Shown here: in pieces, positions 1 through 16,465 of the stretch
How positions within the stretch are numbered: position 1 is the first letter of the stretch
Layout: the number at the start of each line of letters is the position of its first letter
IMG/VR virus record: IMGVR_UViG_3300037258_000590
Location: 146,384-210,383 of that record
Direction: 5' to 3' (one strand)
Length of the DNA stretch: 64,000 nucleotides
The notes under the pieces: generated by a model
Databases searched by the model: none
Seen by the model: the letters and a program-made list of their open reading frames with translations, nothing else
Told to the model about the DNA's origin: nothing
Made by a program: the position numbers and the translations under genes

Positions 1-27
1 CCCTCCATCACCGCTATCGACGCGTAA

Positions 28-113
28 GGCGAAACGTTCCGGCCTGCCGGTTCTTCCCGCCGGCCGGAACGTCTGTGAGAGCTGACCTCCTCACACTGAC
101 GATGCCAGGTCAC
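28..113 (+). ncRNA. Type II hammerhead ribozyme, intact core (copy A)
   Basis: GGC-GAAAC; stem III GTTCCGGCC/GGCCGGAAC; GTC cleavage triplet 71-73; stem I TGTGAG/CTCACA; CTGACGA 96-102; T+GCC closes stem II; loop-I TGACCT pairs with 3' AGGTCA (pseudoknot). Confidence 0.9.
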
Positions 114-302: not shown

Positions 303-304
303 CA

Positions 305-395
305 GGCGAAACGTCCCACTGATCGGAGGTTACTCCGGCCAGCCGGGACGTCCGCGGGCGCTGAGCACCCCGTACCGAAGAAGATGCCGGATCAC
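305..395 (+). ncRNA. Hammerhead-family repeat, altered core (copy B)
   Basis: GGCGAAACGTCCC...GGGACGTC present, but core reads CCGAAGAAGA-TGCC and the pseudoknot is degraded. Confidence 0.6.
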
Positions 396-406
396 CGGAG
401 GTACAC

Positions 407-652: not shown

Positions 653-675
653 GCGAAACGTCCGTTCCGCGCCTA

Positions 676-752
676 GGCGAAACGTTCCGATCCTCCCACC
701 GGTCGGAACGTCTACGGGAGCTGACCTACCCGCACTGAAGATGCCAGGTCAC
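676..752 (+). ncRNA. Type II hammerhead ribozyme, intact core (copy C)
   Basis: GGCGAAAC; stem III GTTCCGATC/GGTCGGAAC; GTC 710-712; stem I TACGGG/CCCGCA (1 mismatch); CTGAAGA 735-741; TGCC; TGACCT/AGGTCA pseudoknot. Preceded by a partial duplicate TAGGCGAAACGT at 650-661. Confidence 0.85.
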
Positions 753-769
753 CAGATGAGGAGACGGCT

Positions 770-1354: not shown

Positions 1355-1461
1355 CCCGCAAAGACGTTTCCCGGCCCTTGATCCCCCGAAGCCGGCCGGG
1401 ACGGCAACCCAGGGGGGCTAACACCACCCCGCTCAGGATCATGAGACAGGAGACAGCAACC

Positions 1462-2034
1462 ATGATCAAGGTGCTAGTTCAGTCCGTCCCGGACGAAATT
1501 CCGGACGGCACGCGCTACGAAGTCGCGGCCGGCCTGCCGGGAGACATGACCGGCTGGTTCCAGATCTCACACGCGGGCCTGGTGCTGGCCACGGGCGAGC
1601 ACAACTACCACGATGACAGCGACTTCTACGCAACCGTATGGGACGGCCAGGGGCCGCGCGAGATCACCTACGCCAGCACGCGCGGGTGGACCTATGCCAA
1701 CAGTGCCACGGCAGACGCCACGCCGGAGGTACAGGCCGCCTACGGCGCGTGGCGCCAGGCCCGCGCGGGCGAGCGTCAGGCCGCAGCCACGGCAGCGGAG
1801 GCGGCCACGCCACGCGCCGGCAAGACAGTCCGGGTGGTCAGAGGCCGCAAGGTGCCCGTGGGCACTGTGGCGGAAGTCGTCTGGTACGGCGAGGGTAAGC
1901 GGTTCAGCCGCCATGCGCCAGTCCCGATGCGCGTTGGCCTGCTGACCGGCGACGAGCGCGTGTTTACTGATGCGGCCAACGTCGAAGTCGTGACGGCCGA
2001 TGAGCCAGGCCACCCGATGAGGAGACACCTGTGA
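1462..2034 (+). CDS. hypothetical phage protein
   Basis: ATG after GACAGGAG SD. Confidence 0.7.
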   Translation: MIKVLVQSVPDEIPDGTRYEVAAGLPGDMTGWFQISHAGLVLATGEHNYHDDSDFYATVWDGQGPREITYASTRGWTYANSATADATPEVQAAYGAWRQARAGERQAAATAAEAATPRAGKTVRVVRGRKVPVGTVAEVVWYGEGKRFSRHAPVPMRVGLLTGDERVFTDAANVEVVTADEPGHPMRRHL

Positions 2035-2372
2035 AAGTCATCAAAGAGATTGACCACGATCCCCGCACTGTTCGCGAGGTCCGTGTGTTCGTCCGTCAGT
2101 ACATTTTCGTTGACGGTGTATCCAGCTACGACGTCCACCTGTCCGAGCTGCGGTACCGCAGCTCAGACGGTGAGCTGACCGACTGCCTGACACTGGACGA
2201 CAGCTTTAGCCACGTGCCCGGAGACGCTGAAATAGAAGCCCTGCCGTACATCGCTCCCAGCGTACGGCGCGAGGCCCCCGGGGTGTTCTACATCCTGACC
2301 GGGCCTTACCGGAAAGGCCCGTACGCAAACCGCAGGGAGGCTAACGCGGACATCAGGGCTGGCCGCTGGTAA
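2031..2372 (+). CDS. hypothetical protein
   Basis: GTGA overlap, GAGGAG SD. Confidence 0.65.
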   Translation: MKVIKEIDHDPRTVREVRVFVRQYIFVDGVSSYDVHLSELRYRSSDGELTDCLTLDDSFSHVPGDAEIEALPYIAPSVRREAPGVFYILTGPYRKGPYANRREANADIRAGRW

Positions 2373-2396
2373 CCCCCTGCGCACTACCACTAGCCA

Positions 2397-2473
2397 GGCG
2401 AAACATTTCGATTCTCCCACTGGTCGGAACGTCCGCGAGAGCTAACCTGCCCGCGCCGATGATGCCAGGTCAC
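2397..2473 (+). ncRNA. Hammerhead-family repeat, altered core (copy D)
   Basis: GGCGAAAC...GGAACGTC; core CCGATGA-TGCC-AGGTCAC; mismatches in stems I and III. Confidence 0.65.
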
Positions 2474-2493
2474 GAGATAAGGAGACAGGTTCT

Positions 2494-2673
2494 GTGATCT
2501 ACCAGGTCGGCCGGTTCACCCGCGACCAGTTCACATCGGACGCCGCTTTCCACGCGGCGATCAGGTGCCAGATGATCAGTTGCCCCGAGCTGTACCCCGA
2601 GCTGGCAGAGGCCGCCGCCGAGACCGAGCGGCTGGCACCCAAGATCCGCAAGACCGGAAAGAAGACATCATGA
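2494..2673 (+). CDS. small hypothetical protein (59 aa, below ORF-track cutoff)
   Basis: GTG after AAGGAG SD; open to TGA 2673 overlapping the next ATG. Confidence 0.45.
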   Translation: MIYQVGRFTRDQFTSDAAFHAAIRCQMISCPELYPELAEAAAETERLAPKIRKTGKKTS

Positions 2674-2782
2674 ACCCCTACCTGGTCCGCGACGAGAACG
2701 GCGAGCCGGTCATGCGGTTGGTCGAACGTGACCGCTACGGCCGGTTCTGCCGACCTTACTACGCCTACATCTGGAAGACATC

Positions 2783-4090
2783 ATGAGCGTCAGCCTTAGC
2801 GCGGCAGCATCGGTCCGGCAGCACGCGGAGCGCCTGGAGAAGGATATCCGCAACCAGGCCAAAACCGTAGCCTACGACCTGACCATGTGCGCCCAAGCCG
2901 TGTTACGCGTGCGATCAGCCGGTCAAGTAACCCAGGAAGAAGAGAAGGCTATGGAAGCTAGCAAACTGAGCGCCGCCTACACCAGCGGCCCGCCGCACCC
3001 GCTCGCCGCCCGGCCGCGCGAGTACACCGGCCCGATGGCCCCGGACCACAAGCTGGGCGGCATCTACGCCATCATGGACCGGCACGGCATGCTGCCGGAC
3101 GGACCGGGCGGGATCGCCTGCCTGCGGTGCGCGAAGCCGCTCAACGCTGACGGCGGCCACCCCGCTGAGCTGTACGCCGGGACATACAACGGCCTGTGCT
3201 ACCCGTGCACCTCGGCGCCGGCATTCGTGGCCCGCACGGCCGTCCTGGACGGCGCCCGGGAGGTGTCCTGGCCGCCGCACTGCCCGTCGTGGCGCCGGGA
3301 CCGCGAGAAGCACATTGCCTATGAAGGCTGCCCGGCCTGCGACGGCCTAGGCATCACCCTGGGCACCCGGACCTACAGCAGCGGCGGCCGGTCATGCGAG
3401 CCGTGCCGGACCCGGTTCTGCGGCCACCCGGTACGCGCGGCGGCCAGCCGGTGGAACGAGCAGGCCATGCGGTCTTGCCAGGCCGCCTTCGACCAGGCCA
3501 TCGACCAGGCCGCGGGCGTGCCAGCACGATGCACCAGGAAACGTCGCACCGAGCTGCGTGAGGCGTTCATCGGCCTCGCCGGGAACGGCCGCTCGCCGGA
3601 ATGCGAAGCGCTGCGCCTGGCTCACCTGGCTGGCTACTGGCGCATCCGCGCGCTTATCCGCGCGCACTTCGAGGCGCGAGGCTGGAACCAGTGGTCAGAT
3701 ACCAGCAACGATGAGGCGTGGGCCAGGGCGTACTGCACCTGGCGCGGACTGGATTATGACGCGCTGGCCGCCGGCGAGCCCCAGCCCGGACCGCCTGAGC
3801 CCCAGCCCGAACCGCCTGGGCCGGAAAACCCGCAAGCCGGGCGGATCGCCGTGCTACGGGCCCTGACCTTCGAGCGGGCCGAGGAGTGGTGGCGTACCGG
3901 CCGGATCAGTACCGACGAGTGGGAGGCGTTCGGTTACGCCTGGCGGCGCGGCGCCGTCCGCTTCTCCGGCGTCGGCGCCGGTTTCGAGCACCCCGTCTCG
4001 CAAAAGGTGCGCGAGCTGGGCAACGCCATCATGGGCGGCAATGCACCAGGCACCTGCCCGTGCCCGGCGGGCGAGAACTGCACCCTGTGA
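2783..4090 (+). CDS. hypothetical protein with multiple CxxC pairs (likely Zn-binding)
   Basis: CLRC, CYPC, CPAC, CEPC motifs; ATGA overlap. Confidence 0.65.
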   Translation: MSVSLSAAASVRQHAERLEKDIRNQAKTVAYDLTMCAQAVLRVRSAGQVTQEEEKAMEASKLSAAYTSGPPHPLAARPREYTGPMAPDHKLGGIYAIMDRHGMLPDGPGGIACLRCAKPLNADGGHPAELYAGTYNGLCYPCTSAPAFVARTAVLDGAREVSWPPHCPSWRRDREKHIAYEGCPACDGLGITLGTRTYSSGGRSCEPCRTRFCGHPVRAAASRWNEQAMRSCQAAFDQAIDQAAGVPARCTRKRRTELREAFIGLAGNGRSPECEALRLAHLAGYWRIRALIRAHFEARGWNQWSDTSNDEAWARAYCTWRGLDYDALAAGEPQPGPPEPQPEPPGPENPQAGRIAVLRALTFERAEEWWRTGRISTDEWEAFGYAWRRGAVRFSGVGAGFEHPVSQKVRELGNAIMGGNAPGTCPCPAGENCTL

Positions 4091-4726
4091 AGCGACCCAG
4101 CATCACCCCGTAACTACCGAAAGGCCCTGAAATGTCTGACCGGTCTGAGCTGGCTACTCCATCCGGGTACGCCGGCGTTGAATACACGGACGGTAAGGTG
4201 CACGCCATCGACCTGGACACGCTGCACGGTGAGACGCCGGCGTACCCGCGCGGGATGCCGTTGTGGCGCGAACCCGTGGTGTGCGGGGCCGCTAGTGGCG
4301 TGTCCAGCGATGAGGGCGGTCCTGCCGCGTTGCACCGCAAGACGCTCACCTGCTGGATGTGCGTCTCCATCCTGGCCTGAGATCTTCCCACTGGTCGGAG
4401 CTTCCGGCCGGGCTGCTTACGACAGGAAAACCACATGACTGAATTCATCAGCGGCTACCGGGACCGCGCGGGCATTGACTCACGCGCCAATTCCGCGCTA
4501 CTGCGCATTGCCGCGATCAGCGCGGACGTGTACGTGCCGGCCGCCGTGCGTCTCGCGCAGGTCGCGCAGGTCATGGCGGGCGAGCCGATCCTCACGGACC
4601 CGTGCCCGGCCGCACGCACCGTACGCGCGGAGCTTGCCGGCCGCACCGCTCTGCAAGACAGAGGGCTGACCTCATGAAACTACACGCGGTAATCGAGCAG
4701 CCGTCACTGACCGTGGAACAGCAACA

Positions 4727-5206
4727 ATGACAGGAGATCCCGTGAACCAGCCCGTACCTCCGCGCAAGCGGACCCTTTCCGACCTGGAGATCAACCGGTA
4801 CGCCATGTTCCTGCCGTACCTGCCAGCCGAGGAAAACAACGACGCGGAAGCGATGCCGTGCATCGTGCTGGGCAGCGACGAGGACGGCAACGGCGGCGTG
4901 CAGGTGTACGCCTACTCCGAGAACGGCGTAGTCCGGATCAGCGTGCACACCTACTCAGCCGGACCAGACGAGAACGGGGACGGCCCGTGGGCTTACTACG
5001 ACCAGGGGCATGAGCGCGTGATCCCGGTCGTCATCGACGTCTACGACGCAGTGCCTGTAGGGCAGGCGACAGCTGAGGTGAACCCGCTCGGGCAGCCGCT
5101 CTGGGTGCCGTCAGCCGGGCTGGCCTACGCGGGCGTGCCACTGGACCAGATCCCGGACGACGGCCAGCGTGCCGCCGTGGCGCGTCACCGCGAGGCGGAC
5201 CTGTGA
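4727..5206 (+). CDS. acidic hypothetical protein
   Basis: ORF in co-oriented array. Confidence 0.6.
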   Translation: MTGDPVNQPVPPRKRTLSDLEINRYAMFLPYLPAEENNDAEAMPCIVLGSDEDGNGGVQVYAYSENGVVRISVHTYSAGPDENGDGPWAYYDQGHERVIPVVIDVYDAVPVGQATAEVNPLGQPLWVPSAGLAYAGVPLDQIPDDGQRAAVARHREADL

Positions 5207-5396
5207 GCGGCAGGGACAAGCTCAACGCCCAACCGGACGAGGACCCGGCACTGAACACGCGTATCGCAGAGCTGGAAGCCGAACAGCAGGCCGCGATCAC
5301 GGCTGGCACGATCAGCGCATGGGAGCGGACGCCGGCATGCGCAGAACTGGACCGGCTGCGCGACGAGCGCGGCTACCGGCCGGGTACTGCCGGATA

Positions 5397-5482
5397 GGCG
5401 AAACGTCCAGCCGGCAGGAAACTTCCGGCTCGCAGGAACATCCATGAGAGCTGACCGTCTCACGGAGATGATGCCAGGTCAC
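5397..5482 (+). ncRNA. Hammerhead-family repeat, probably inactive (copy E)
   Basis: GGCGAAAC; stem I CATGAG/CTCACG; loop AGCTGACC; core GAGATGA instead of CTGATGA; TGCCAGGTCAC; then GACAGGAG. Confidence 0.65.
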
Positions 5483-5498
5483 CACGACAGGAGCTGAC

Positions 5499-6053
5499 AT
5501 GAGACTGCACACGAACCTGACCGCAGACAATATCCGGACATGCCTGGACCAGGCCAAGGCAGGCGACATACCCAGTGACATCGTGTTCGACGTATTCGGT
5601 GAAACCGGTTCCAGGTCGCATCCGCACGGCTTCGAGGTCCACCTGGCCAGCACGCAGAAGAACACGCGCGATGATGGCGTGACCCGTAGGACCAACCCCA
5701 TGGCCAGGCACGACGGCCCGCGCTACGCCGCGAGCTACGACGAATGGGGCTGGTTCCTAGCCGAGCTGTTCGCGGCAGACCGGGCCGCCAAAGCAGGCCC
5801 GTACAAGAACGAAGACGATTTCCACGTCAAGACCAGGCACGCCTATACGCCCATGGGCAGGGCCCAGCTGCCGCCGGACCACGCGGGCGACCTGGAGCCG
5901 GCCCGCGCCGAGCCGGACACCGAGCCGGTCAGCGACGCGAGGCTGCCCGTCATCGAGCGGATCGATGCCGTACTGGCCGATTACCCGCCTGACCCGGTTG
6001 TGTTCGGATCCAGCCCAGCACACCTCTCGTTGCGTCCGCGGATGCCGGTATGA
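5499..6053 (+). CDS. hypothetical phage protein
   Basis: GACAGGAG SD + ATG. Confidence 0.7.
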   Translation: MRLHTNLTADNIRTCLDQAKAGDIPSDIVFDVFGETGSRSHPHGFEVHLASTQKNTRDDGVTRRTNPMARHDGPRYAASYDEWGWFLAELFAADRAAKAGPYKNEDDFHVKTRHAYTPMGRAQLPPDHAGDLEPARAEPDTEPVSDARLPVIERIDAVLADYPPDPVVFGSSPAHLSLRPRMPV

Positions 6054-6511
6054 GATTACGGTCAGCCCGCGACAAAAGCACAGCAGTGAAAAAGGAAGAG
6101 ACGATCATGGTGATGAACATCCAGGAAGAGGCAGCCAGTCTCAACGATGAACAGCTCGGGCGAGAGGTTGGCGCTATGGCGCTAGCTCGCGCCCTGGATA
6201 CGCGAAAGGGATCGCGCGAGCGGGCGTTCCTTGACGAGATCCACCAGCGGCATCCCGAGCTGTGCCGGTGTCCGGCCCGGGAGCGGTCTCACTGGCTACA
6301 CCAGCGGGTTAACGACCCGTACGGCACCAGCAACCGTCACCCGTTCTGGGAGACGGTCAGCTTCGAGCAGGTAGGCCCGTGGCGCATCTTCAAGCGGGAT
6401 GCCGCCTGGTACGGCTACGAGACCCGGCAGAACGCGTGGACGACCGCCCGGCCATCCCGCGATGACATCATCAAGCATGCCGCCGGGCCGCACGTTGATA
6501 TCTGGGCCTGA
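6050..6511 (+). CDS. hypothetical protein
   Basis: ORF in array; true start may be downstream. Confidence 0.55.
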   Translation: MRLRSARDKSTAVKKEETIMVMNIQEEAASLNDEQLGREVGAMALARALDTRKGSRERAFLDEIHQRHPELCRCPARERSHWLHQRVNDPYGTSNRHPFWETVSFEQVGPWRIFKRDAAWYGYETRQNAWTTARPSRDDIIKHAAGPHVDIWA

Positions 6512-6608
6512 CCGCTGACCGACAGGCCGCGCAAGCGCGCCGCGGCGCTAGCGCAACGTTCTAACCGGTCGGAGCTTTTCCGGCCGCTCAACGACAGGAG
6601 ACTGATGC

Positions 6609-7178
6609 GTGATGAAGACCGTGCAGACCGTACCTGATGCGCTGGCCAGCGTGAACGCAGCTCAAAGCGCACCCGTGCAATTCGAGCCAGGGCCTCTCCA
6701 TACACTGGTCGCACTGCGTCACATAGCCCGTGAGCTGACCGCGCTGCGTGACCTGGCCGCAGCGGTGCGAGCCGCGCTGGCCGTACCGTCTGACGCAGAT
6801 GAGCTGGCCGACGCGGCGGACCGGGAAGCACGCAGCATGGCCCCGCCCGTACCCGGTGTTACCCGCGTGGGCGGCTACGTGGTCCGGGCACTCATCACGA
6901 CCCCCGGCCGGAACACCGCATGGTTCGTCGCGGCCGAAGGTGACAGCGAGCACAGCACCGGACGCTGGTCCACCTGGCGGGCCGAGCAGGATTCCACCGG
7001 GCACCTGCTGTTCAGCTGCGCCCGGTTCTTTAACGTCCGGGCGGGGCTGACCGCGGCGGATATCCAGGCTGACTTGCACAATGAGCCTGAAACCTGGCGC
7101 CCCGACAGGCCGCACAACCGCACCGCGGCGCTAGCCAGCCTGGCCGGACGAGCGGGCATCACGCCGGCCGCGGAATAG
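6609..7178 (+). CDS. hypothetical protein, paralogous to C-terminus of 12734..13903
   Basis: GACAGGAG SD; shared ELA..A...AR.MAPPVP.VTR..GY.VRA block. Confidence 0.7.
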   Translation: MMKTVQTVPDALASVNAAQSAPVQFEPGPLHTLVALRHIARELTALRDLAAAVRAALAVPSDADELADAADREARSMAPPVPGVTRVGGYVVRALITTPGRNTAWFVAAEGDSEHSTGRWSTWRAEQDSTGHLLFSCARFFNVRAGLTAADIQADLHNEPETWRPDRPHNRTAALASLAGRAGITPAAE

Positions 7179-7239
7179 GCGAAACGCCCCCGCCAGCCGG
7201 GGTTTTTCCGGCCGCGCTATGACAGGAGAACAGCACACC

Positions 7240-7626
7240 ATGGACGAAACCCCTGGCCGAACCGAGGTGTTCCGCGTCCCGGACAACACGCCGGCTCCAG
7301 ACCAGGCGTTCTACACAATCACCCCCGAAGATGCCGGCCAGCACGAAATCCGCACCACCGCCGGGGTTATCGAAGTCCCCGATGGCATCTCTCCCGCCCG
7401 GACGGGACCTTTCCAGCTCGCAGACGCCGGAACGCGCCTGTACGGCATGGCGAGCCAAGCCTGGCCCGGCACGGGCTGGTACTGGACGACCACGCCTCAT
7501 GAAACCTGCGCAGTATGCGGAAGCCAGCTAGACCATACCGGCATCCGCGGACGCAACGATGAGTTCGTGCACCTGGATGACGACCACGAGGATCACGCCC
7601 CGGTCCGGCTCCGTTCTGAGCAGTAG
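7240..7626 (+). CDS. hypothetical protein
   Basis: GACAGGAG SD + ATG, after truncated repeat 7178-7228. Confidence 0.65.
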   Translation: MDETPGRTEVFRVPDNTPAPDQAFYTITPEDAGQHEIRTTAGVIEVPDGISPARTGPFQLADAGTRLYGMASQAWPGTGWYWTTTPHETCAVCGSQLDHTGIRGRNDEFVHLDDDHEDHAPVRLRSEQ

Positions 7627-7681
7627 TCACAGTAACCGCTGAATACTGCGGCCGGATACGGACGTAGACGACCAGACGATA

Positions 7682-7767
7682 GGCGAAACGTTCTGGCCAG
7701 CCGGAAATTTCCGCGTGGCCAGAACGTCCGCGGGGGCTGACCTCCTCGCGCTGATGATGTCAGGTCA
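7682..7767 (+). ncRNA. Type II hammerhead ribozyme, intact core (copy F)
   Basis: GGCGAAAC; stem III GTTCTGGCCA/TGGCCAGAAC; GTC 7726-7728; stem I CGCGGG/CTCGCG; CTGATGA 7751-7757; T-GTC; TGACCT/AGGTCA pseudoknot. Confidence 0.92.
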
Positions 7768-7784
7768 TAGAACAGGAGCTGATC

Positions 7785-7973
7785 ATGTCGACTAAGCACA
7801 ACACCCGGCATCCGGACCGGAACGCCAGCCGGTATCCGGCGCGACTGCACCAGCGCGGCCTTTCCAAGACTCCGCCGATGGCGTCAGCTGAGAGCCTGCG
7901 TACCGTGCAGGAGCGCCGGGCCAGGGAGACGGGCTCGCCGTGGGCACCGGCTCAGGCGGCCGAAGCCAGCTGA
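7785..7973 (+). CDS. small basic hypothetical protein flanked by two intact hammerheads
   Basis: AACAGGAG SD + ATG. Confidence 0.65.
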   Translation: MSTKHNTRHPDRNASRYPARLHQRGLSKTPPMASAESLRTVQERRARETGSPWAPAQAAEAS

Positions 7974-7983
7974 CAGTCCATCA

Positions 7984-8071
7984 GGCGAAACGTTCTGACC
8001 AGCCGGAGATTTTCCGCGTGGCCAGGACGTCCGCGGAGGCTGACCGCCTCGCGCTGATGATGCCAGGTCAC
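7984..8071 (+). ncRNA. Type II hammerhead ribozyme, intact core (copy G)
   Basis: GGCGAAAC; stem III GTTCTGACCA/TGGCCAGGAC; GTC 8029-8031; stem I CGCG(G)AGGC/GCCTCGCG; CTGATGA 8054-8060; TGCC; loop TGACC/GGTCA pseudoknot. Confidence 0.9.
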
Positions 8072-8088
8072 GAACAGGAGCGCAGATC

Positions 8089-8304
8089 ATGCTGAAGGCA
8101 TTCCGCCAGGACGGCACCGAAGTCCGGCCGGGCGACATCATAACCGATTTTCGCAGTGAGACGGCGACCTTCGAGCGTGCTACCCGCGCGCCGCACGGCC
8201 ACCGGACGGGCAGAATCCAGGTGGATGGCCCGCACGGGAGCGAGTTCTACATGACGGTGTTCAACCTAGACGTCCGCGAGGTGCCGGACGCAAACCCCGC
8301 CTGA
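8089..8304 (+). CDS. small hypothetical phage protein
   Basis: AACAGGAG SD + ATG. Confidence 0.7.
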   Translation: MLKAFRQDGTEVRPGDIITDFRSETATFERATRAPHGHRTGRIQVDGPHGSEFYMTVFNLDVREVPDANPA

Positions 8305-8677
8305 CGTCGTGGCGCAGCAGCAACAGGTGAGCAAGCGCGCCGCCGCACGGCAGGCTACATCGCGGCGCCGTGACAATACGGCTGAGCCGGAGCCGGCTGA
8401 CTGGCGCCCGCCCTGGTACATACCGCCCGCCCGGCGGGCAGCACGGAGGAAACGATCATGACAGACGCCGCTAACCAGCGCACTCGCTACGCGCTGATCG
8501 CCATTGAGGTACGCGTGCCTGTGGACCTGCGCCACGACCCGCACGTAGCCAGCGAGATCGCGCTGGCCGCGCAGGAGTACGCCAACGAGACTTACGGCCG
8601 TGACTATGACGGCAGCGAACCTGAGCCGGTCAGCGCTCCAGCAGGCCGGGCCGACGAACAACACAGAGGAAACGCCC

Positions 8678-9133
8678 GTGACTGACAAGAATACCGCTGG
8701 CACGCCTAAGCTTCCTGGCGGCCTGGACGCCCGCGTGCGCCTGGTCAGCCAGCAGCGTGCCGGCATGGGCGGTTACGCCACGCTGAGCCTGTACGGCACG
8801 GCTGCCGCACCGCAGCTGTACGCGGACACCCCGGATACGTTCAGCGGAGTCAGCGTGGCGCCGGATCCGGCTGACCTGATCCGGTTCGCCCGCGGACTGC
8901 TGGCTTTCCTGGGCGAGAACTACGGTGTGCAGCTGCCGCCGTGGCGCCCGGCCAGCAACGGCGCAGGCAAGCGGCACTGGTTCCTGACCCGGTACAGCGG
9001 TCACGATGATCAGAGCGTGCCGCTGGCTGACCGCTACCACTTCGGAGGCGGCGGCCAGCTGGTGCGCTATGCCACCTGCGAGTCGGCGCAACGCGCGGCC
9101 AGCAAGCTAAACGCCGCCGAGGTGACGCCATGA
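8678..9133 (+). CDS. hypothetical protein
   Basis: GAGGA SD + GTG. Confidence 0.6.
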   Translation: MTDKNTAGTPKLPGGLDARVRLVSQQRAGMGGYATLSLYGTAAAPQLYADTPDTFSGVSVAPDPADLIRFARGLLAFLGENYGVQLPPWRPASNGAGKRHWFLTRYSGHDDQSVPLADRYHFGGGGQLVRYATCESAQRAASKLNAAEVTP

Positions 9134-9468
9134 GCTGGACACCAGAGCAGCTGCGTGCGCTAAACGACGAGCGCGCACGCAAGCAGGCCATGCGGGACAC
9201 CGGGGTTGACCCGGCTGAACGCGAAGCGGAGGACGTGCCCCCCGGTTCGCTTGAATGGCACCCGAGCACGGCGTTTCCCGAGCACCAGCAGCGCGATCTG
9301 CACGATTCCCCGTACTGGGCTGAGGTAAGCCCAGACGGGTCGTGGGGCATCTTGTCTCCAGACCAGGACGGCGACGTTACTTCTGGCCGCGCAGCCGATA
9401 TGACCACAGCTAAGCACGCTGTGGCGAACTGGGAAACCGCTCACCAGCAGGCCGCCGGATCCAGCTGA
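9130..9468 (+). CDS. hypothetical protein
   Basis: ATGA overlap, GAGGTG SD. Confidence 0.6.
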   Translation: MSWTPEQLRALNDERARKQAMRDTGVDPAEREAEDVPPGSLEWHPSTAFPEHQQRDLHDSPYWAEVSPDGSWGILSPDQDGDVTSGRAADMTTAKHAVANWETAHQQAAGSS

Positions 9469-9502
9469 CCGCACTATCCACCCCTTACGGCAGGAGCCGA
9501 TT

Positions 9503-10207
9503 ATGAATTACAGCGAGATCCTGGATACGCAGGGCCGGTACCGGGCCCGGCTGGTGCTGGACGAGGACGCAGGCGAGCGGTATGACGACGGCGCTTCGCC
9601 ACTACTGCGCATTGACAGCGGCGCCAGGGCTACGCATGTTATGGCTACCGGCCGGCCGCTGGACGCAGACGAAACAGTGGAGCAGGCCATCTCGTACTGG
9701 CATACCACGCCCGGCGACAGTAACTGGCGGCTGATTGAACGCTACCTGCGGGCCTTTCACGGCGTGACCCAGATCGAGACGTGGCACAGCGGATCGTACT
9801 GGTACGTGACGTACGACAGCGCGGCCTGGCGCGAGTACGCCGGCGCGCCGCCGGGCAGCGCGGACATGTCCGAGTACCGCGCCTGGTGCGAGGGCGACGT
9901 GTGGGGCTGGGTCGTGGAGAAACTCGTGCTCTGGACCACTGCGGACGCGGCGGTCTCCCCCGCGTTCAAGGACGAATGGGAGCACGTCAACTCGTGCTGG
10001 GGCTACTACGGCAACGGCGAGTACCTGAAGCAATGCGCTCGCGAGGCCCTGGCGTATGAAGCCGAACACGGCGATGACCTGCCGCACGAGCCTGCCGCGC
10101 CCGGCACAGGCGATGACACGCTCACGCCAGAGCGAATCGCCGCAGCAGTAGCGGACATGCAACGCGTACAGCGCAACCTGGACGCCGACCGCAACAAGGA
10201 GGGCTGA
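9503..10207 (+). CDS. acidic/aromatic hypothetical phage protein (..GDVWG..SCWGYYG.. motif)
   Basis: CAGGAG SD; motif pattern recalled from uncharacterised phage proteins. Confidence 0.7.
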   Translation: MNYSEILDTQGRYRARLVLDEDAGERYDDGASPLLRIDSGARATHVMATGRPLDADETVEQAISYWHTTPGDSNWRLIERYLRAFHGVTQIETWHSGSYWYVTYDSAAWREYAGAPPGSADMSEYRAWCEGDVWGWVVEKLVLWTTADAAVSPAFKDEWEHVNSCWGYYGNGEYLKQCAREALAYEAEHGDDLPHEPAAPGTGDDTLTPERIAAAVADMQRVQRNLDADRNKEG

Positions 10208-10211
10208 ACTC

Positions 10212-10562
10212 ATGAGAATCACCCAGAAAACTGTCGGGCACCTGGCCGCCGAGGTGGAACGACTATCCGGCCGGGCGCCCGTAACCGTCATCAGCCGGCC
10301 TGGTGACGGCCGCACCCGTTACGTAATGTCCGAGTCGCTGACGAGCGTCTATTGCGGTGCCCGGCAGGCATGTGCGTACCTGCTCGGCATCCTGGCGGGG
10401 CTGGATCCGGACGGGCCGGTGCACCACGTGGACGCCCGGCAGCAATGGGTCGCGGACGTCGATGCGGCATACGCGTACGGCCGGATCCCGGTTGCGGAGC
10501 GCACGGCTCGTGCGAACGGCAGACGGTACGGCGAGTACCTGCGCACGTACGTCATGCGCTAA
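10212..10562 (+). CDS. hypothetical protein
   Basis: AAGGAGG SD. Confidence 0.65.
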   Translation: MRITQKTVGHLAAEVERLSGRAPVTVISRPGDGRTRYVMSESLTSVYCGARQACAYLLGILAGLDPDGPVHHVDARQQWVADVDAAYAYGRIPVAERTARANGRRYGEYLRTYVMR

Positions 10563-10652
10563 AGGAACGTCCGACCAGTCGGAACTTCCGGCTGGCCGGC
10601 ACACCCCGCAGGCACTAACCGGCCTGTGATGCCGGGTCAGCTAAGACAGGAG
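10562..10652 (+). repeat. decayed hammerhead-family repeat
   Basis: AACGTCCGACCAGTCGGAACTTCCGGCTGGCCGG...GATGCCGGGTCA...GACAGGAG; catalytic core lost. Confidence 0.55.
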
Positions 10653-10658
10653 CAGGTT

Positions 10659-11237
10659 ATGCCAGTAAGCAAGCCGGATATCCGGTTCGCGGTCGCGATC
10701 ACTGAATCCGCATACGGCGGCGGGTCGCGATACGTGCATTTCACGGCACAGGCGATGATCGCCGCCATCGGCCGGTTCGGCAGCGATGAGGGCAAACCGG
10801 GCCTGTTCAGCCCGGCCAGCTACGAGCTGCCGTTCGATCCGGACGTCAAGGCGCTAGCGGGCCTGGAGATTTCCGCGCAGGCAGATGAGAACACCATGCG
10901 CAAGACCGGTCAGGAATTCTACGGCTGGTCGGTGGCTTACCAGCGCCGGTCGGTAGAACTGGCCGACGCGGAAGCCATGGTCAGGGTCCTGCGCAAGATC
11001 GGCCGGGGGATGACCCGGCTGTCTGGCGAGCTGGGCAGGCCGGTGACGCTCGCGCAGTTCGCGACGCACGCCGTCCGGGCGCTCACCGCTGAACGCGCGC
11101 CGTTCACCCGACACGTCGAAGACAACCACGACTTCGGGGGGACCGGGTACCGGTCGATGGACCCGGCCGCGCTGGATCACTACATCTGGTCCGAGTGCGC
11201 CGCGTGGCGCGAGCGCTACGGCGTCCAGGTCACGTAA
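10659..11237 (+). CDS. hypothetical protein
   Basis: GACAGGAG SD + ATG. Confidence 0.7.
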   Translation: MPVSKPDIRFAVAITESAYGGGSRYVHFTAQAMIAAIGRFGSDEGKPGLFSPASYELPFDPDVKALAGLEISAQADENTMRKTGQEFYGWSVAYQRRSVELADAEAMVRVLRKIGRGMTRLSGELGRPVTLAQFATHAVRALTAERAPFTRHVEDNHDFGGTGYRSMDPAALDHYIWSECAAWRERYGVQVT

Positions 11238-11277
11238 GACAACACCCGCACCGCAAACAAGACAGGAGCCCGTCAGC

Positions 11278-12339
11278 ATGTCAGGAATTTCCCTGCACGT
11301 ATCTGTCCGGTCAATACAAGATCTGCTCGCAGATGTGCCGCGGCTGACTGGTTTCACGCCAGCCAACAGCCTGGTCATCATCGGAGCAAAGCCCCCGCAT
11401 GACCGCGTGTGCGTCACGCTCCGGTACGACATGCCCGCCGGCGCCGAGACGATAGCCGGGACGCTTGCGCACGCCAGCGACGTCCTGGCCGGCGCGGATG
11501 CCACCAGCGTGGCCGCGGTGATCTACGGAACGCAGGAGCAGGCGGCGCCGATCGTGGCCGGACTGGCCAGCCTGACGGAACTCCAGGCAGAACTCCAGGT
11601 CACCGAGGTCATCAGGGTAGACGCAGGCCGGTACTGGTCGTATACCTGCGATGACCCTGATTGCTGCCCGCCAGAAGGCACCAAGTTCACTGTTGGCGAC
11701 GTTGCCGGCCTGGCAGTCCCGGTACTGGCTGACCGGGAAACGCTGGCGGCCACGCTGGCGCCGGTCACGGGAGCGAGTGCGGAATCGATGCGGGCAGCAA
11801 CGCAAAAGGCCGAGCAGCCTGTCAGCTTGCCGTCAACCGTACACGCCGGGGCAGCCCGTGCATGGCAGCGTGCTACCGCAACTAGCGGGCTGCGTAACAG
11901 CCAGGATCTTCTCCGGCGCTACCGCGCAGGCAATTACGTCATGTCCGACGACGAGGCAGCGCGGATCACGGTGGCGCTGAGCAGCCTGCGGGTTCGCGAT
12001 GACTTGTGGGCAAGGATGGACCCCGCCCACGCCAAAGCTCACCTCGTGCTGCTCACCGACCTGACCCGGCGCGCTCAGCCAGGATACGTAGCAGCCCCGG
12101 CAGGCGTACTCGCATTCGTCGCCTGGCAGTCCGGGAACGGTGCGCTAGCCAATATCGCACTAGACCGGGCGCTGGCCGACCAGCCCAGGTATTCAATGGC
12201 GCAGCTGCTGCGCCAGGTCATCACCGCCGGGGCACCGCCTTCGATGGCCCGGCTGCCGATGACACCAGAGGAGGTTGCCCTCACCTTCGATGAGATGGAT
12301 GACGAAGCCGACCTAGAGGACGAGGCCAGCGAAGAGTAA
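11278..12339 (+). CDS. DUF4192 domain protein
   Basis: DLLADVP..TGF.P.NSLV, RVRD, AAPA..LAF.AWQSGNGALA.IALDRAL...P.YSMA.LL motifs typical of actinobacterial DUF4192. Confidence 0.8.
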   Translation: MSGISLHVSVRSIQDLLADVPRLTGFTPANSLVIIGAKPPHDRVCVTLRYDMPAGAETIAGTLAHASDVLAGADATSVAAVIYGTQEQAAPIVAGLASLTELQAELQVTEVIRVDAGRYWSYTCDDPDCCPPEGTKFTVGDVAGLAVPVLADRETLAATLAPVTGASAESMRAATQKAEQPVSLPSTVHAGAARAWQRATATSGLRNSQDLLRRYRAGNYVMSDDEAARITVALSSLRVRDDLWARMDPAHAKAHLVLLTDLTRRAQPGYVAAPAGVLAFVAWQSGNGALANIALDRALADQPRYSMAQLLRQVITAGAPPSMARLPMTPEEVALTFDEMDDEADLEDEASEE

Positions 12340-12340
12340 A

Positions 12341-12430
12341 GGTGAAACGTCCCGCTGGCCGGAGCTTCCGGCCGGCGGGGCGTCCGCGAGAGCCAGCCGC
12401 CTCGCCGACCTGAACCGCTCGGAGGATGCC
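12341..12430 (+). repeat. hammerhead-family repeat with core replaced (copy H)
   Basis: GGTGAAACGTCCCGC...GCGGGGCGTC and stem I retained; CTGATGA replaced by sequence also found at 21003-21025. Confidence 0.65.
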
Positions 12431-12733
12431 GCAAAGGAAGGACTGACCTGTGAGCACAGACCACGAATTCAGCCCGTGGAAGTTCAACACCGAGTACGCC
12501 CCCGTCCGGTGGGCGCGACGATGCAGGACCTGCCACCTCGGCCTGGGTCACGCCGAGGTCAGCCCGTCGCCTCTGCCGCCAGCGTCGGCGCTCGCCGAGA
12601 TGCCGGAGTGGGAGCGCGCAGCGGTAGAGGGCCTTTCAGCGGCGTACTGGGTGACCGCCGCCGCAAGCAGCAGCGGGATCCGGGAACGGTCCGGCTTCCC
12701 GGACTGGCTCAACAAGTAAAGGAGCACCCGACC

Positions 12734-13903
12734 ATGCACAACACCGGACTAGAAAGCGCAGAGATCCCTGACCCGATAGAGGAAGCGCGCAGGCTGGACG
12801 GGCGCGCCTCCCGCCAGGAAGCGCTGGCGCTAGAGCAGGCCCTGCGCCGCGAAGGCTGGCAGCACACGTTCGCTGCCTACCGCGGCGAAAATTACGACCG
12901 GATGTCCGGCCCGCTCTCAACATCGGTGTCCGGAGCCGGGTACTGGGACCACCCGGACCACCCCGGCGTCGTGATCAGGGCCGGGGAGGGCATCAACTAC
13001 CGGGCGGGGACCTCGTGGGGGGAAGTCTGCATCCTGGCCGGCGAGCGGCTGGCCTCGGTGCAGGCCGAGATCGCGACGGAGCGGGAACGCCGCGCCGCCC
13101 TGGCCGCCGAAGACGCGCGCCTCGCCGCCCTTCCCTCCGTCGCCATCCCCGGTGCCAGCGACACCGATATAGCCGCCCTGTACCGTGCCGTCGGCGAAAC
13201 GCTCGCCGGCCTCAATGACGCGTGCTCAGAGGCGGGCCGCGCGGACCAGCTGTACGGCAACCGGGAAGTATCCCTGCAATGGGATGCCACCAAGGAAGCC
13301 GTCTACGCCGCCCGGCAAGCGGCGGACACGCTCCATCAGCGGCTCATGGTGGCGCAGATCCACCGCGAATCCCTCGCCCGGTCCGAACTCCAGTCCCTGG
13401 CTCCTTACATAGAGGCTGGTGACACCGAGCTGCTGGAAGCGAGCGGCGTGCCCGAAGGCTACGCGGATGAGCTGGCCGCCGAGGCCGAGCACGCCGCCCG
13501 CACGATGGCCCCGCCCGTGCCGGACGTGACGCGAAACGCGGGCTACACCGTGCGCGCGGTCATGCCTGGCCACCCGGCCGGGAACGACCTGCTGGCCAGC
13601 TGGTGGGTAGCAGCCGAAGACATAGCGGACGGCGGATGGGTGACCTGGGAAGCCTACGCACTGAACGGCGAGCAGGCAGGACAGCTGAGTTACAACGCCG
13701 GCCACTACTTCGACGGCACGGATCAGGCCGTGAACCGGCGCGGCGCGCTGGCGAACCTGGCTGTCCGGGCCGGCACGATGCCGGAAATGGCCCACCTCAT
13801 CGCGGCTGAGGTCATGCGGTACGCCGGGAACATACTCCCGCCGTCCGTTAAAGCCGAGGACCAGCGGATGGCGTCCCGCCTGCGCAAGTGGGCTTCGCGC
13901 TGA
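12734..13903 (+). CDS. multi-domain hypothetical protein
   Basis: AAAGGAG SD + ATG. Confidence 0.7.
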   Translation: MHNTGLESAEIPDPIEEARRLDGRASRQEALALEQALRREGWQHTFAAYRGENYDRMSGPLSTSVSGAGYWDHPDHPGVVIRAGEGINYRAGTSWGEVCILAGERLASVQAEIATERERRAALAAEDARLAALPSVAIPGASDTDIAALYRAVGETLAGLNDACSEAGRADQLYGNREVSLQWDATKEAVYAARQAADTLHQRLMVAQIHRESLARSELQSLAPYIEAGDTELLEASGVPEGYADELAAEAEHAARTMAPPVPDVTRNAGYTVRAVMPGHPAGNDLLASWWVAAEDIADGGWVTWEAYALNGEQAGQLSYNAGHYFDGTDQAVNRRGALANLAVRAGTMPEMAHLIAAEVMRYAGNILPPSVKAEDQRMASRLRKWASR

Positions 13904-13935
13904 GCGCCGGAACTACTGACAGACAGGAGACGGTC

Positions 13936-14673
13936 ATGACCGATAACACGATCACCCAGCCCGCGCCCGCACCGCGCGATGGAGACGCAGCTGAAATCCG
14001 CGAGCTGCTAGCTGAACTGTCCGGCGCCCTGGATGGCGACTTCGGTGACTGGCCGCAAGGTCGCAGCCTGGTGCGCCAGGTGACCGCGTACCTGGACGGC
14101 GAGGCGAGCCGCCTGCCTGCGCGGGCTGGTTCCCCGGCCCTGCGGGTGATCGCGGCCATCCCGCAGGGCACGGGCCGGGAGATCATCGCGGTGGTGGAGC
14201 AGCCGGGCCCGTATCCGGGCGGCCAGCGTTACGGGACGGTCCGCGGGTACCGGAACGACCTGGATGACGGGACGGTGCGGTGGTCGGCGGAGGCCGGGCA
14301 TTACGACTACCTGGACCTAACCCGGGCGCTGCGCGGCATGTGCAGCCGGGCGGGAATAAAGGTGGTGTGGCCGGATCCGGCAGCACTGACGCCGGACATG
14401 GTGCTGGCCCAGCGGATGGCGGAAACGATGTGGGCGATCGCGACCAGCACGAACCACGCCATCGCGGTGTACAGCACGCCGGTCTACCTGCACATGGAAC
14501 AGGCGTTCCTGAGCGCGGTACAGGTGGCCTACAGCTGCTCGCGACTAACCGCGCGGCGGGTGCGGGATCTGCTGGCCGAGTACGGGCCGGATGAGTCTCT
14601 GCAGGGCACGTCCGGTAGCGGCGTGTGGAGCTACGTCCGGTTCGCGCAGGACCGGGCCAACCGGCGCTACTGA
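13936..14673 (+). CDS. hypothetical protein
   Basis: GACAGGAG SD + ATG. Confidence 0.7.
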   Translation: MTDNTITQPAPAPRDGDAAEIRELLAELSGALDGDFGDWPQGRSLVRQVTAYLDGEASRLPARAGSPALRVIAAIPQGTGREIIAVVEQPGPYPGGQRYGTVRGYRNDLDDGTVRWSAEAGHYDYLDLTRALRGMCSRAGIKVVWPDPAALTPDMVLAQRMAETMWAIATSTNHAIAVYSTPVYLHMEQAFLSAVQVAYSCSRLTARRVRDLLAEYGPDESLQGTSGSGVWSYVRFAQDRANRRY

Positions 14674-15257
14674 CAACAGAACATCACCGGAGAGCAGGCT
14701 AGCAGTGAAATCAGTCCCGATGAAAACCAGTGAGCTAGGCCATTTCATATGCGCAGCGCATGGCGGCTGCCTACACCAGGATCGCACCATCTACTCCAGC
14801 GGAGTCTGGGTGCAGTACACCCTCGGGGGGATAACGCGCCACGGCAGTAGCGCCCATCAAGACTGTTTCGAGGCATGGGCACTCCGGGAAGCCGCACCAG
14901 TTGATCAGATGCCGCAGAGCGCGCCCGCAGAACCCGGCGTCAAGAACGAGCCGTGGCCGATAGCTAACGCCATCGCCTGCCTAGAAGAGGTGCGCGACCG
15001 CGAGAGCGGCAGCAACGCTGATCCCGCGCGTGCCGAGACAGTACGGCTGACCATCGATTACGCCATCGAGGTGGTCAAGGCCCTCAACACGATGCGCGAG
15101 CCGCAGCCGCCGGACCCGGCCGAGGAGGCACGCAAGGCAGTCCGCAAGTTCGCAGGCGAGCTGGGCCAGGCGATCGAGAACCTGGGGCTGGCCATGCAGG
15201 ACATCGCTGACGGGAACATCCCGGAACGCGACGGCTAACCGGAGACAGGAGACCCAG

Positions 15258-15640: not shown

Positions 15641-15720
15641 CGGCGAAACGTCCCGCCGGCCGGAACTTCCGGATAGCGGGGCGTCCGCGGGGGATAGCCG
15701 CCTCGCGCTGATGATGCCGA
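15641..15720 (+). ncRNA. Type II hammerhead ribozyme, intact core, no pseudoknot tail (copy I)
   Basis: CGGC-GAAAC; stem III GTCCCGC/GCGGGGC; GTC 15683-15685; stem I CGCGGG/CTCGCG; CTGATGA 15708-15714; T-GCCG gives a 4-bp stem II. Confidence 0.8.
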
Positions 15721-16465
15721 ACCGTTTTTTATGACAGGAGTGCTGATCGTGATCGGTATTTGCATCGGGTTTACGCGAATCGGTGAGGCGGCGACATGGC
15801 GGGAGGCCATGGCCGCTTGCACGACCTGGGCGAGTTCATGAAGTCGGCGGCCGGTTTCGAACAGCGGGGCTGGCACGGGTTCGCCGCGGACTCGGCGGTC
15901 AGCGGGGTTCTGGTCCGGCTGATCGATGACGAGACGGTGCAGACCGGTTTCGCGGTGAGCTGAGATGACCACCGCGAAGACAAGCATGGTGCACTGCGGC
16001 GTGCCCCGGTGGGATGCCCGCGTGACAGACGCTGCCGGGAAGCCGGTGCCCGCATGGTACCCGCCATGGTCGCGCAGGTGGTTCATCATCCGCCGGGCGG
16101 CCGGAGAAGCCGGGGTGACACTGGAAACCAGGATCCCGGGATGGCCCAGCGGAATAGCAAAGCACGATAACCAGGCTGCGGCCGAGATGGCGGCACGCGA
16201 AACCTGGCGCGGATACGCGGCAGAGGTGACCAGGATCACCGGCCGGGAACAGGAGAGCGAACCATGGACGAGCTGATGGCCCCGGATGATGTCGTGACCC
16301 GGATAACCGAAGCAGCCGCTGATGCGGACGCGCTGGCGATCATGCGCGGCGTTCCGCACGCAATGCTGCTGGCCGTGGCGGACCTGCTGCACATCGACCC
16401 GTACGGCCACCACGACCCGTGGCTGCGCAAGGCCATCGTGACCGAAGCCAGGACCTGATGAGGAG

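What the first reader, a model, noticed from the sequence alone, without database searches (positions are those of the whole stretch)
7729..8031. Single small ORF bracketed by two intact hammerheads: candidate excised or circular RNA
Seen: cleavage at copies F and G would release a 303-nt RNA carrying the SD and the 62-aa ORF 7785..7973. Established: hammerhead products have 5'-OH and 2',3'-cyclic phosphate ends, which are the substrates of RtcB-type ligases, and tandem hammerheads generate circles in retrozymes and viroid-like RNAs. Joining these ends would rebuild a complete hammerhead. The same logic applies to 74-712 (A to C). Inference: DNA-encoded circular mini-mRNAs, which could also be the mobile form of the cassettes.
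Basis: inference. Interest (0 to 1): 0.75.

Follow-up and report, generated by a model that had tools for sequence, protein, structure and literature searches.

The report
Hammerhead-bracketed small gene in phage
Two self-cutting hammerhead RNA motifs really do flank one small gene in this soil phage, but this is one unit of a known kind of ribozyme array that most likely chops a long phage transcript into single-gene messages; nothing here shows that the piece becomes a circle.

Summary
Copies F (7681-7768) and G (7983-8071) are canonical type II hammerheads, and cutting after C7728 and C8031 would release exactly 303 nt carrying a Shine-Dalgarno site and ORF 7785-7973. They belong to an array of at least 14 hammerhead copies, plus decayed remnants, across about 20 kb of a 210-kb soil phage. 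Each copy sits between a stop codon and the next ribosome-binding site.

- **Selection on the fold:** stems I and III and the pseudoknot covary strongly across this phage and a 190-kb relative.
- **The gene:** ORF62 is real. A 73%-identical homologue (dN/dS 0.37) in a related contig is also bracketed by two hammerheads.
- **Cassette shuffling:** cassette order differs between relatives, and homology blocks begin and end in the hammerheads. This supports DNA-level shuffling.
- **Circles:** untested. No RNA runs were listed, the phage encodes no RtcB, other RNA ligase or reverse transcriptase, all frames of the circle contain stops, and no junction contig was found.

Perreault et al. 2011 described this arrangement, raised the circle idea and detected no circles. 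The best reading is processing into hairpin-capped linear mini-mRNAs. This is a new member of a known kind.

The parts
7681..7768 (+). Hammerhead F, type II. Canonical core CUGAUGA, GUC cleavage triplet (cut after 7728), 3-bp stem II with one G.U, 6-bp loop-I/tail pseudoknot.
   Evidence: 34.6 bits; 99.5 bits with own model
7729..8031 (+). Predicted 303-nt product of cleavage at F and G. The 5'-OH end starts with the stem I hairpin; the 3' end is the stem III hairpin ending in GUC with a 2',3'-cyclic phosphate.
   Evidence: the end chemistry is established hammerhead chemistry, not tested here
7774..7778 (+). Shine-Dalgarno AGGAG, 6 nt before the ATG of ORF62.
   Evidence: the same motif follows almost every copy
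7785..7973 (+). ORF62, a small basic protein of unknown function. GC3 is 0.79. A homologue (73% identity, dN/dS 0.37) lies in related contig L225:6513-6710.
7983..8071 (+). Hammerhead G, type II. Canonical core, cut after 8031, stem II GGC/GCC, 5-bp pseudoknot. It is 91% identical to F.
   Evidence: (31.8 bits)
8089..8304 (+). Next cassette gene (71 aa) behind SD 8076-8080. Its homologue in L225:3372-3566 also sits behind a hammerhead.
27..113 (+). Hammerhead A, canonical core CUGACGA, cut after 73.
304..395 (+). Copy B. Non-consensus core (CCGAAGAAGA: U4C plus insertion), probably weak or inactive.
675..752 (+). Hammerhead C, canonical core CUGAAGA, cut after 712. It is preceded by a truncated 5' remnant at 651-674.
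2396..2473 (+). Copy D, U4C core (CCGAUGA), with a mismatch in the pseudoknot and in stem III.
5396..5482 (+). Copy E, broken core (GAGAUGA) and AUC triplet with a 15.2/16.2 mismatch.
15641..15725 (+). Hammerhead H, canonical. The only copy above the Rfam gathering score. It lacks the UGACCU/AGGUCA pseudoknot.
10563..10640 (+). Decayed copy (GAAA and core lost). A similar decayed copy lies at 12340-12417, and copy I at 17802-17885 keeps only the 5' half.
7177..7239 (+). Remnant keeping GGCGAAAC plus a stem-III-like hairpin plus SD. Similar remnants lie at 1355-1461, 4381-4434 and 6541-6608.

Best explanation
The 7729-8031 segment is one unit of an array of type II hammerhead ribozymes that tiles the intergenic spacers of a block of small accessory genes of unknown function, probably early, in a 210-kb soil phage. 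Its distant protein relatives are actinobacteriophages.

**Layout.** Each repeat is stop codon, then hammerhead, then AGGAG, then start codon.

**Proposed mechanism (inferred).**
1. The block is transcribed as long polycistronic RNA.
2. Each competent hammerhead cuts itself between its stem III and stem I hairpins.
3. The short 3-bp stem II lets the two products separate.
4. The upstream message is left with a long GC-rich 3' hairpin and a 2',3'-cyclic phosphate.
5. The downstream message is left with a 5'-OH, a hairpin/pseudoknot cap and a free ribosome-binding site about 25 nt further on.

F and G would therefore yield a linear 303-nt monocistronic mRNA for ORF62. The likely benefits are insulation from neighbouring sequence and gene-specific stability and translation.

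**Second role.** At the DNA level the same roughly 90-bp repeats act as recombination linkers, so hammerhead-plus-gene cassettes are shuffled, gained and lost among related phages.

**Shown versus inferred.** Shown: motif integrity, selection on the fold, placement, conservation of the bracketed cassette, and shuffling. Inferred: cleavage in vivo, the effect on stability and translation, and linear rather than circular fate.
For: - **Array:** there are 14 copies on one strand within genome positions 144762-164268, plus remnants in most other long spacers.
- **Placement:** stop codons abut or overlap the 5' end of the motif, and AGGAG plus a start codon follows 5-10 nt after it.
- **One long transcription unit:** no sigma-70-like promoters were found, and terminator-like sites are no more frequent than in shuffled sequence (14 found against 10.3 expected) within 1-19000. 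This is weak evidence.
- **Selection on the RNA fold:** 20 of 28 pairs carry compensatory changes, including one pseudoknot pair that switches A-U to G-C between the two phages.
- **N7 varies freely:** it takes U, C, A and G, as expected for an active core.
- **Cleavage triplet:** GUC in 101 of 102 related copies.
- **Relatives:** G001 has 15 copies. Soil metagenome contigs give about 102 more unique copies and 83 hammerhead-to-hammerhead units, including about 15 single-ORF units of 217-340 nt.
- **Conserved cassette:** the ORF62 cassette is again bracketed by two canonical hammerheads in L225, as a 302-nt unit.
- **Unrelated phage:** L044 shows the same design.
- **Literature:**
  - Clustered hammerheads flank single genes in prophages, cleave in vitro and in E. 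coli, and were proposed to process polycistronic RNA (PMC3088659).
  - Linear type II products with cyclic-phosphate and 5'-OH ends were captured in vivo (PMC8782182).
  - Processing with differential stability remains the standing hypothesis (PMC6765202).
Against: - No transcript data exist for this phage, so cleavage in vivo is not shown.
- F and G score below the Rfam gathering threshold.
- F has a weakened stem II and a competing hairpin.
- Many copies are decayed, or carry U4C (4 of 14 here, 12 of 15 in G001, about 25% in relatives). This variant is reported to cut poorly in vitro, so fast cleavage is not required at every site.
- Remnants keep the stem-III-like hairpin, which may have a separate role.
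- Any benefit for stability or translation is untested.
- Linear fate is not demonstrated. A host RtcB could ligate some product.
Confidence: 0.6

Rival explanations
1. After double cleavage, the 5'-OH and 2',3'-cyclic phosphate ends of the 303-nt RNA are joined, either by a host RtcB-type ligase or by hammerhead reverse reaction. The result is a stable circular mRNA for ORF62.
For: - The end chemistry fits RtcB (established; PMC8782182).
- Ribozyme-flanked RNAs are circularised in engineered E. coli systems (titles and abstracts).
- All copies share the same stem II (GGC/GYC), so any 3' end can pair with any 5' end.
- Tandem ribozyme pairs enclosing 186-399 nt also occur in RNA viruses (PMC13725137).
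Against: - The phage encodes no RtcB, Rnl2-type or LigT-type ligase, and no match to T4 Rnl1, although that control was uninformative. The host is unknown.
- The two ends would be held together by only 3 bp.
- The rebuilt hammerhead would re-cleave, and no alternative fold that would protect a circle stands out. Product folding energy and end pairing are within codon-shuffled controls.
- Stops occur in all frames, so there is no rolling-circle translation.
- Related unit lengths show no constraint: 302 against 303 nt, and mod-3 is uniform.
- No junction contig was found.
- Circles were sought and not detected in analogous prophage arrays.
Confidence: 0.1
2. The repeats are mainly DNA-level elements. 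They would be selfish or recombinogenic intergenic repeats, like PeSL cassettes of T4-type phages, that mobilise ORFan cassettes. Ribozyme activity would be incidental or ancestral.
For: - Homology blocks between relatives are short (200-580 bp), begin and end in hammerheads, and lie in different order.
- F and G are the most similar pair, at 91%.
- There are many decayed copies and remnants.
- Orthologous sites are intact in one phage and decayed in another.
- The PeSL precedent includes DNA mini-circles (PMC2839356).
Against: - Compensatory changes in stems I and III and the pseudoknot, an invariant catalytic core and a freely varying N7 show selection on the RNA fold, not only on DNA identity.
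- No 302-bp deletion joint appears in DNA contigs from four soil runs. Contigs drop rare variants, so this is weak.
- This explanation can coexist with the best explanation as a second role.
Confidence: 0.15
3. The hammerhead fold acts mainly as a structured translation or regulatory element upstream of each ribosome-binding site. It could be a standby or insulator structure, or a cleavage step coupled to termination of the upstream ORF. Cutting would be slow or conditional at many sites.
For: - Spacing to the SD is constant, and the pseudoknot lies just 5' of it.
- Stop codons overlap the 5' strand of the motif, so a terminating ribosome would block folding.
- Structurally intact U4C copies are conserved.
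- Ribozyme self-cleavage is needed for translation initiation in some RNA viruses (PMC13725137).
Against: - There are no data on translation.
- The canonical cores at F, G, A, C and H argue for efficient cleavage at those sites.
- The eukaryotic precedent concerns cap-independent initiation, which is not relevant to bacteria.
Confidence: 0.15

Closest known systems
Clustered type II hammerhead ribozymes flanking genes in prophages and phages (Perreault et al. 2011, PMC3088659; Rfam RF02276)
   Same: - Type II topology, with a loop-I/3'-tail pseudoknot and a short stem II.
- Several copies flank individual genes or short gene blocks of unknown function in phage DNA.
- Processing of polycistronic RNA was proposed, and the circle or splicing idea was already raised there.
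   Different: - The array here is much denser: at least 14 copies in 20 kb, and 15 in the relative.
- It lies in uncultivated high-GC soil jumbo phages.
- Stem III is long.
- There is an extra U after A9.
- U4C is a recurrent, structurally conserved variant in this lineage.
- Cleavage has not been tested here.
Retrozymes and viroid-like circular RNAs with tandem hammerheads
   Same: - Two hammerheads delimit a unit of a few hundred nucleotides.
- The products carry 5'-OH and 2',3'-cyclic phosphate ends.
- Joining the ends rebuilds a hammerhead.
   Different: - Retrozymes and viroid-like RNAs are non-coding.
- They use type III or type I motifs.
- They fold into stable rods or branches that silence the ribozyme.
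- They rely on a tRNA ligase or RtcB plus a reverse transcriptase or RNA polymerase for propagation.
- Here the unit is a bacterial-style mRNA with an SD and a stop codon, shows no rod-like fold, has no reverse transcriptase or ligase in the phage, and has no circle evidence.
PeSL mobile regulatory cassettes of T4-type phages (Arbiol et al. 2010, PMC2839356; PMC4122927)
   Same: - Repeated intergenic regulatory motifs flank small ORFans in a variable region.
- Differences between relatives are bounded by the motifs.
   Different: - PeSLs are a promoter plus a terminator stem-loop, whereas these motifs are ribozymes with an adjacent ribosome-binding site.
- DNA mini-circles were shown for PeSLs and were not seen here.
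Ribozyme insulators used in synthetic biology
   Same: A self-cleaving hammerhead directly upstream of a ribosome-binding site removes upstream RNA context and leaves a hairpin-capped 5'-OH leader.
   Different: - RiboJ is an engineered single element derived from a satellite RNA.
- The elements here are natural, type II, arrayed between every gene, and they also cap the 3' end of the upstream message.

Membership tests
Hammerhead ribozyme, type II (RF02276) | Conserved core C3 U4 G5 A6 N7 G8 A9, G12 A13 A14, and the A15.1-U16.1 pair | tested here: met
   F and G carry all of these positions. An extra U lies between A9 and G10.1, which the Rfam alignment treats as an insert.
Hammerhead ribozyme, type II (RF02276) | Three helices with stems I and III closed by loops and stem II open, supported by covariation | tested here: met
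   Cells are 90.1% paired, 20 of 28 pairs carry compensatory changes, and slid controls give 27-42%. The alignment was fitted to the model, which favours it somewhat.
Hammerhead ribozyme, type II (RF02276) | NUH cleavage triplet | tested here: met
   GUC in F and G, and in 101 of 102 related copies.
Hammerhead ribozyme, type II (RF02276) | Pseudoknot between loop I and the 3' tail after stem II | tested here: met
   UGACCU pairs with AGGUCA over 6 bp in F and 5 bp in G. One pair switches to G-C in the relative.
Hammerhead ribozyme, type II (RF02276) | Score at or above the Rfam gathering threshold (37 bits) | tested here: not met
   F scores 34.6 and G 31.8. Sibling H scores 39.6. The shortfall comes from the long stem III insert and the extra U, not from core defects.
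Hammerhead ribozyme, type II (RF02276) | Self-cleavage activity | not testable with these tools
   This needs in vitro transcription or in vivo end mapping.
Ribozyme-delimited circular RNAs (viroid-like RNAs, retrozymes) | A covalently closed RNA is detected | not testable with these tools
   No RNA run was listed. The junction 29-mer is absent from metagenome contigs. That test is weak, because records of this genome may be masked and the contigs are probably DNA assemblies (not checked).
Ribozyme-delimited circular RNAs (viroid-like RNAs, retrozymes) | A stable rod-like or branched fold that brings the ends together and silences the ribozyme | tested here: not met
   Product folding energy is about 1.2 sd below codon-shuffled controls. 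End pairing is matched or exceeded in 39% of shuffles.
Ribozyme-delimited circular RNAs (viroid-like RNAs, retrozymes) | A ligase and a replicase or reverse transcriptase are available | tested here: inconclusive
   The phage has no RtcB, RNA_ligase, LigT-type or RVT_1 match. The T4 Rnl1 control did not ring anywhere. The host is unknown and may supply RtcB.
PeSL-like mobile regulatory cassettes | Repeated intergenic motif bounding indels and rearrangements between related phages | tested here: met
   Homology blocks start and end in hammerheads, and cassette order is swapped in L225 and non-collinear in G001.
PeSL-like mobile regulatory cassettes | The motif is an early promoter plus a terminator stem-loop | tested here: not met
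   No sigma-70-like promoter was found, and terminator-like sites are not enriched over shuffled sequence (14 found against 10.3 expected). The motif is a ribozyme.
PeSL-like mobile regulatory cassettes | DNA mini-circles or deletions arising between adjacent repeats | tested here: inconclusive
   No joint skipping about 302 bp appears in contigs of four DNA runs. Contigs drop rare variants.

The most novel reading that the evidence does not exclude
In an rtcB+ host, the F-G product and the many similar 220-340-nt single-ORF units in this phage lineage are ligated into circular, exonuclease-resistant mini-mRNAs that are translated from their own Shine-Dalgarno site. This would make them the first natural DNA-encoded circular mRNAs of a bacteriophage. 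The universal GGC/GYC stem II would also allow ends of different cassettes to be joined at the RNA level.
Probability: 0.08. Interest if true: 0.8.

Novelty: new member of a known kind. Interest (0 to 1): 0.4.

Why it matters
The role of hammerhead arrays in phages has been open since 2011 and was still called elusive in a 2019 review. This soil-phage lineage gives an unusually rich data set:

- More than 130 related copies.
- Conserved single-gene units bracketed by two ribozymes.
- Natural series of intact, U4C and decayed copies at orthologous sites.
- Clear evidence that the ribozyme repeats are also the seams of gene-cassette shuffling.

This makes concrete tests possible. One is whether cleavage sets mRNA stability and translation gene by gene. 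A second is whether U4C copies are tuned slow cutters. A third is whether any product is circularised. The specific finding is a typical member of a known arrangement, not a new kind of element.

Tried and rejected
- **RNA evidence:** no RNA run holds the region.
- **DNA runs:** they show only the contiguous cassette with no excision joint.
- **Close cultured relatives:** the phage collection has no near match. Only primase-polymerase similarity of 25-27% to actinophages was found, so the host is unresolved. A genome-wide hammerhead pattern scan hits many phyla and gives no host clue.
- **ORF62 as an ORFan:** the large protein search found only the query itself. A tblastn against fetched metagenome loci then found a homologue, so the ORFan reading was dropped. 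No family or confident fold was found.
- **Dedicated end-joining helix:** the product's predicted fold pairs the F core with 7964-7978. Codon-shuffled controls do as well in 39% of cases, so this was rejected.
- **Multiple-of-3 spacing:** 10 of 13 cleavage-to-cleavage distances in this genome are multiples of 3 (P about 0.002, post hoc). This is not replicated in G001 (5 of 14) or in 83 related units (26/33/24), so it was treated as chance.
- **U4C hammerheads as widespread in viruses:** the pattern scan gave 100 loci, which my own rough estimate puts close to chance expectation. The 78 of them searched with the covariance model gave no hit, so the variant looks lineage-specific.
- **Circle junction search:** nothing was found. 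This carries little weight.

Full report
**Context.** The window is the last 64 kb of a 210,383-bp IMG/VR virus record with direct terminal repeats. It has 67.6% G+C and comes from soil metagenomes. The phage collection holds no near match. Its primase-polymerase is only 25-27% identical to those of Gordonia and Mycobacterium phages, so the host is unknown, possibly an actinobacterium.

**Observation.**
F (7681-7768) and G (7983-8071) each have the full type II hammerhead layout:
  - stem II 5' strand GGC;
  - GAAA;
  - a long stem III hairpin;
  - GUC;
  - a stem I hairpin;
  - CUGAUGA;
  - one extra U;
  - stem II 3' strand (GUC in F, GCC in G);
  - AGGUCA, which pairs with the UGACCU of loop I.
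- Cutting after C7728 and C8031 gives 303 nt, with AGGAG at 7774-7778 and ORF 7785-7973.
- A loose hammerhead pattern gives 7 hits in the window against 0.08 expected.
- Rfam's type II model scores F at 34.6 bits and G at 31.8 bits, below the 37-bit gathering score. A sibling copy at 15641-15725 scores 39.6.
- Thermodynamic folding recovers stems I, II and III for F, G, C and H. In F, the C-to-U change that weakens stem II also creates a small competing hairpin over the core.

**The array.**
- A covariance model built from nine copies finds 14 copies on the + strand between genome positions 144762 and 164268.
- Six copies have a consensus core: one before the window, then A, C, F, G and H.
- Four copies have C at position 4: two before the window, then B and D.
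- Four copies are broken.
- Most other long spacers in the block hold remnants that keep the stem-III-like hairpin and the ribosome-binding site.
- Every copy sits between a stop codon, which often overlaps its first bases, and an AGGAG plus start codon 5-10 nt downstream.
- Between 1 and 19000 there are no sigma-70-like promoters, and terminator-like sites are not enriched over shuffled sequence (14 found against 10.3 expected).
- The genes are small and match only PHROG families of unknown function, or nothing.

**Selection on the RNA.**
- A 190-kb relative (G001) carries 15 copies in its first 24 kb.
- Across the 29 copies from both phages, 90.1% of cells are paired, 20 of 28 pairs show compensatory changes, and slid controls give 27-42%. 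One pseudoknot pair switches from A-U to G-C between the phages.
- Soil metagenome contigs add about 102 unique copies. GUC is present in 101 of them, N7 takes all four bases, and about a quarter have C4.
- A pattern scan for C4 hammerheads in viral contigs returned about the number I estimate from chance. No covariance-model hit appeared outside this lineage, so C4 looks lineage-specific.
- U4C is reported to reduce activity in vitro yet to suffice in vivo in a viroid (PMC3088659).

**The bracketed gene.**
- ORF62 has coding-like GC3 of 0.79.
- The billion-scale protein search found only the query itself.
- tblastn against fetched loci found a 65-aa homologue in L225 with 73% identity and dN/dS of about 0.37.
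- That homologue is also bracketed by two canonical hammerheads and forms a 302-nt unit.
- The gene after G has its homologue elsewhere in the same contig, again behind a hammerhead, so the order is swapped. Nucleotide homology blocks between relatives are 200-580 bp long and begin and end in hammerheads.
- Among 83 related hammerhead-to-hammerhead units the median is 644 nt. About 15 are single-ORF units of 217-340 nt.
- An unrelated phage contig, L044, shows the same stop-hammerhead-SD-ORF design with 256-272-nt units.

**Circles.**
- No RNA run was listed.
- DNA runs show the cassette contiguous and without an excision joint. One variant carries 8037 A>G, which repairs a mismatch in stem I of G.
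- The phage has no RtcB, RNA_ligase, LigT-type ligase or reverse transcriptase. The T4 Rnl1 search was uninformative.
- The phage does encode a CCA-adding-type enzyme with an HD domain.
- The 303-nt circle has stops in all frames.
- Its predicted fold is not unusual against codon-shuffled controls.
- The 8031-to-7729 junction is absent from metagenome contigs.
- Perreault et al. described multiple hammerheads flanking single genes in prophages and showed cleavage in vitro and in E. coli. They proposed processing into single-gene mRNAs, and they explicitly mentioned circular or spliced products, which they could not detect.
- A 2019 review still lists the function as unresolved.
- Linear type II products were captured in vivo in Desulfovibrio.

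**Mechanistic reading.**
- In the type II topology the cut falls between two closed hairpins, and only a 3-bp stem II holds the halves together.
- This favours release.
- It also leaves a 3' hairpin on the upstream message.
- It leaves a 5' hairpin/pseudoknot with a 5'-OH just ahead of the ribosome-binding site on the downstream message.
- I therefore favour processing into linear, end-capped mini-mRNAs (confidence 0.6).
- The repeats double as recombination seams for cassette shuffling, analogous to PeSL elements.
- Circularisation by a host ligase is chemically possible but unsupported (about 0.1).

**Verdict.** This is a new member of a known kind, of moderate interest as a dense, comparative data set for an open question.

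Noticed in passing
window 304-395 and 2396-2473; genome 144762-144850 and 145426-145515; G001 (L087/L088) 12 of 15 copies: A structurally intact hammerhead variant with C instead of U at core position 4 (CCGANGA) recurs in this phage lineage. It makes up about 25% of 102 related copies and switches between U and C at orthologous sites. Among the viral-contig pattern matches tested, it was not found outside the lineage.
   Followed up: yes
genome 144809-164229 (window -1574 to 17846): Ten of 13 successive cleavage-to-cleavage distances are multiples of 3 (P about 0.002, post hoc). This is not replicated in the relative or in 83 related units, so it is probably chance.
   Followed up: yes
window 4381-4434, 6541-6608, 7177-7239, 1355-1461: Decayed cassette remnants keep a CCGGA(N)nTCCGG-type hairpin, the inner part of stem III, plus the GACAGGAG ribosome-binding site, but have lost the catalytic core. 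The hairpin may have a role of its own, either as an RNA 3' cap or as a palindromic DNA site.
   Followed up: partly
window 41105-42529 (+): A 474-aa protein has a poly(A) polymerase/CCA-adding head domain and an HD domain. From memory, HD domains of bacterial CCA-adding enzymes have 2',3'-cyclic phosphodiesterase activity. ARAGORN finds no tRNA gene in the window.
   Followed up: no
window 33213-35285 (+): A 690-aa ORF has an internal LAGLIDADG-like domain at residues 360-420. It could be an intein or a homing endonuclease insertion.
   Followed up: no
window 15641-15725 and 17802-17885: Copies H and I form a separate subfamily (76% identical to each other). They lack the UGACCU/AGGUCA pseudoknot. 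H is followed by a run of six T, and I keeps only the 5' half.
   Followed up: partly
window 1030-1075: A short tandem Pro-Glu repeat (CCCGAG units) lies inside the 194-aa gene that follows hammerhead C.
   Followed up: no
window 8037 and 8070 (run X4): A related strain in another soil sample carries A>G at 8037, which restores a G-C pair in stem I of G. It also carries A>G at 8070, which turns a pseudoknot U-A into U.G.
   Followed up: partly
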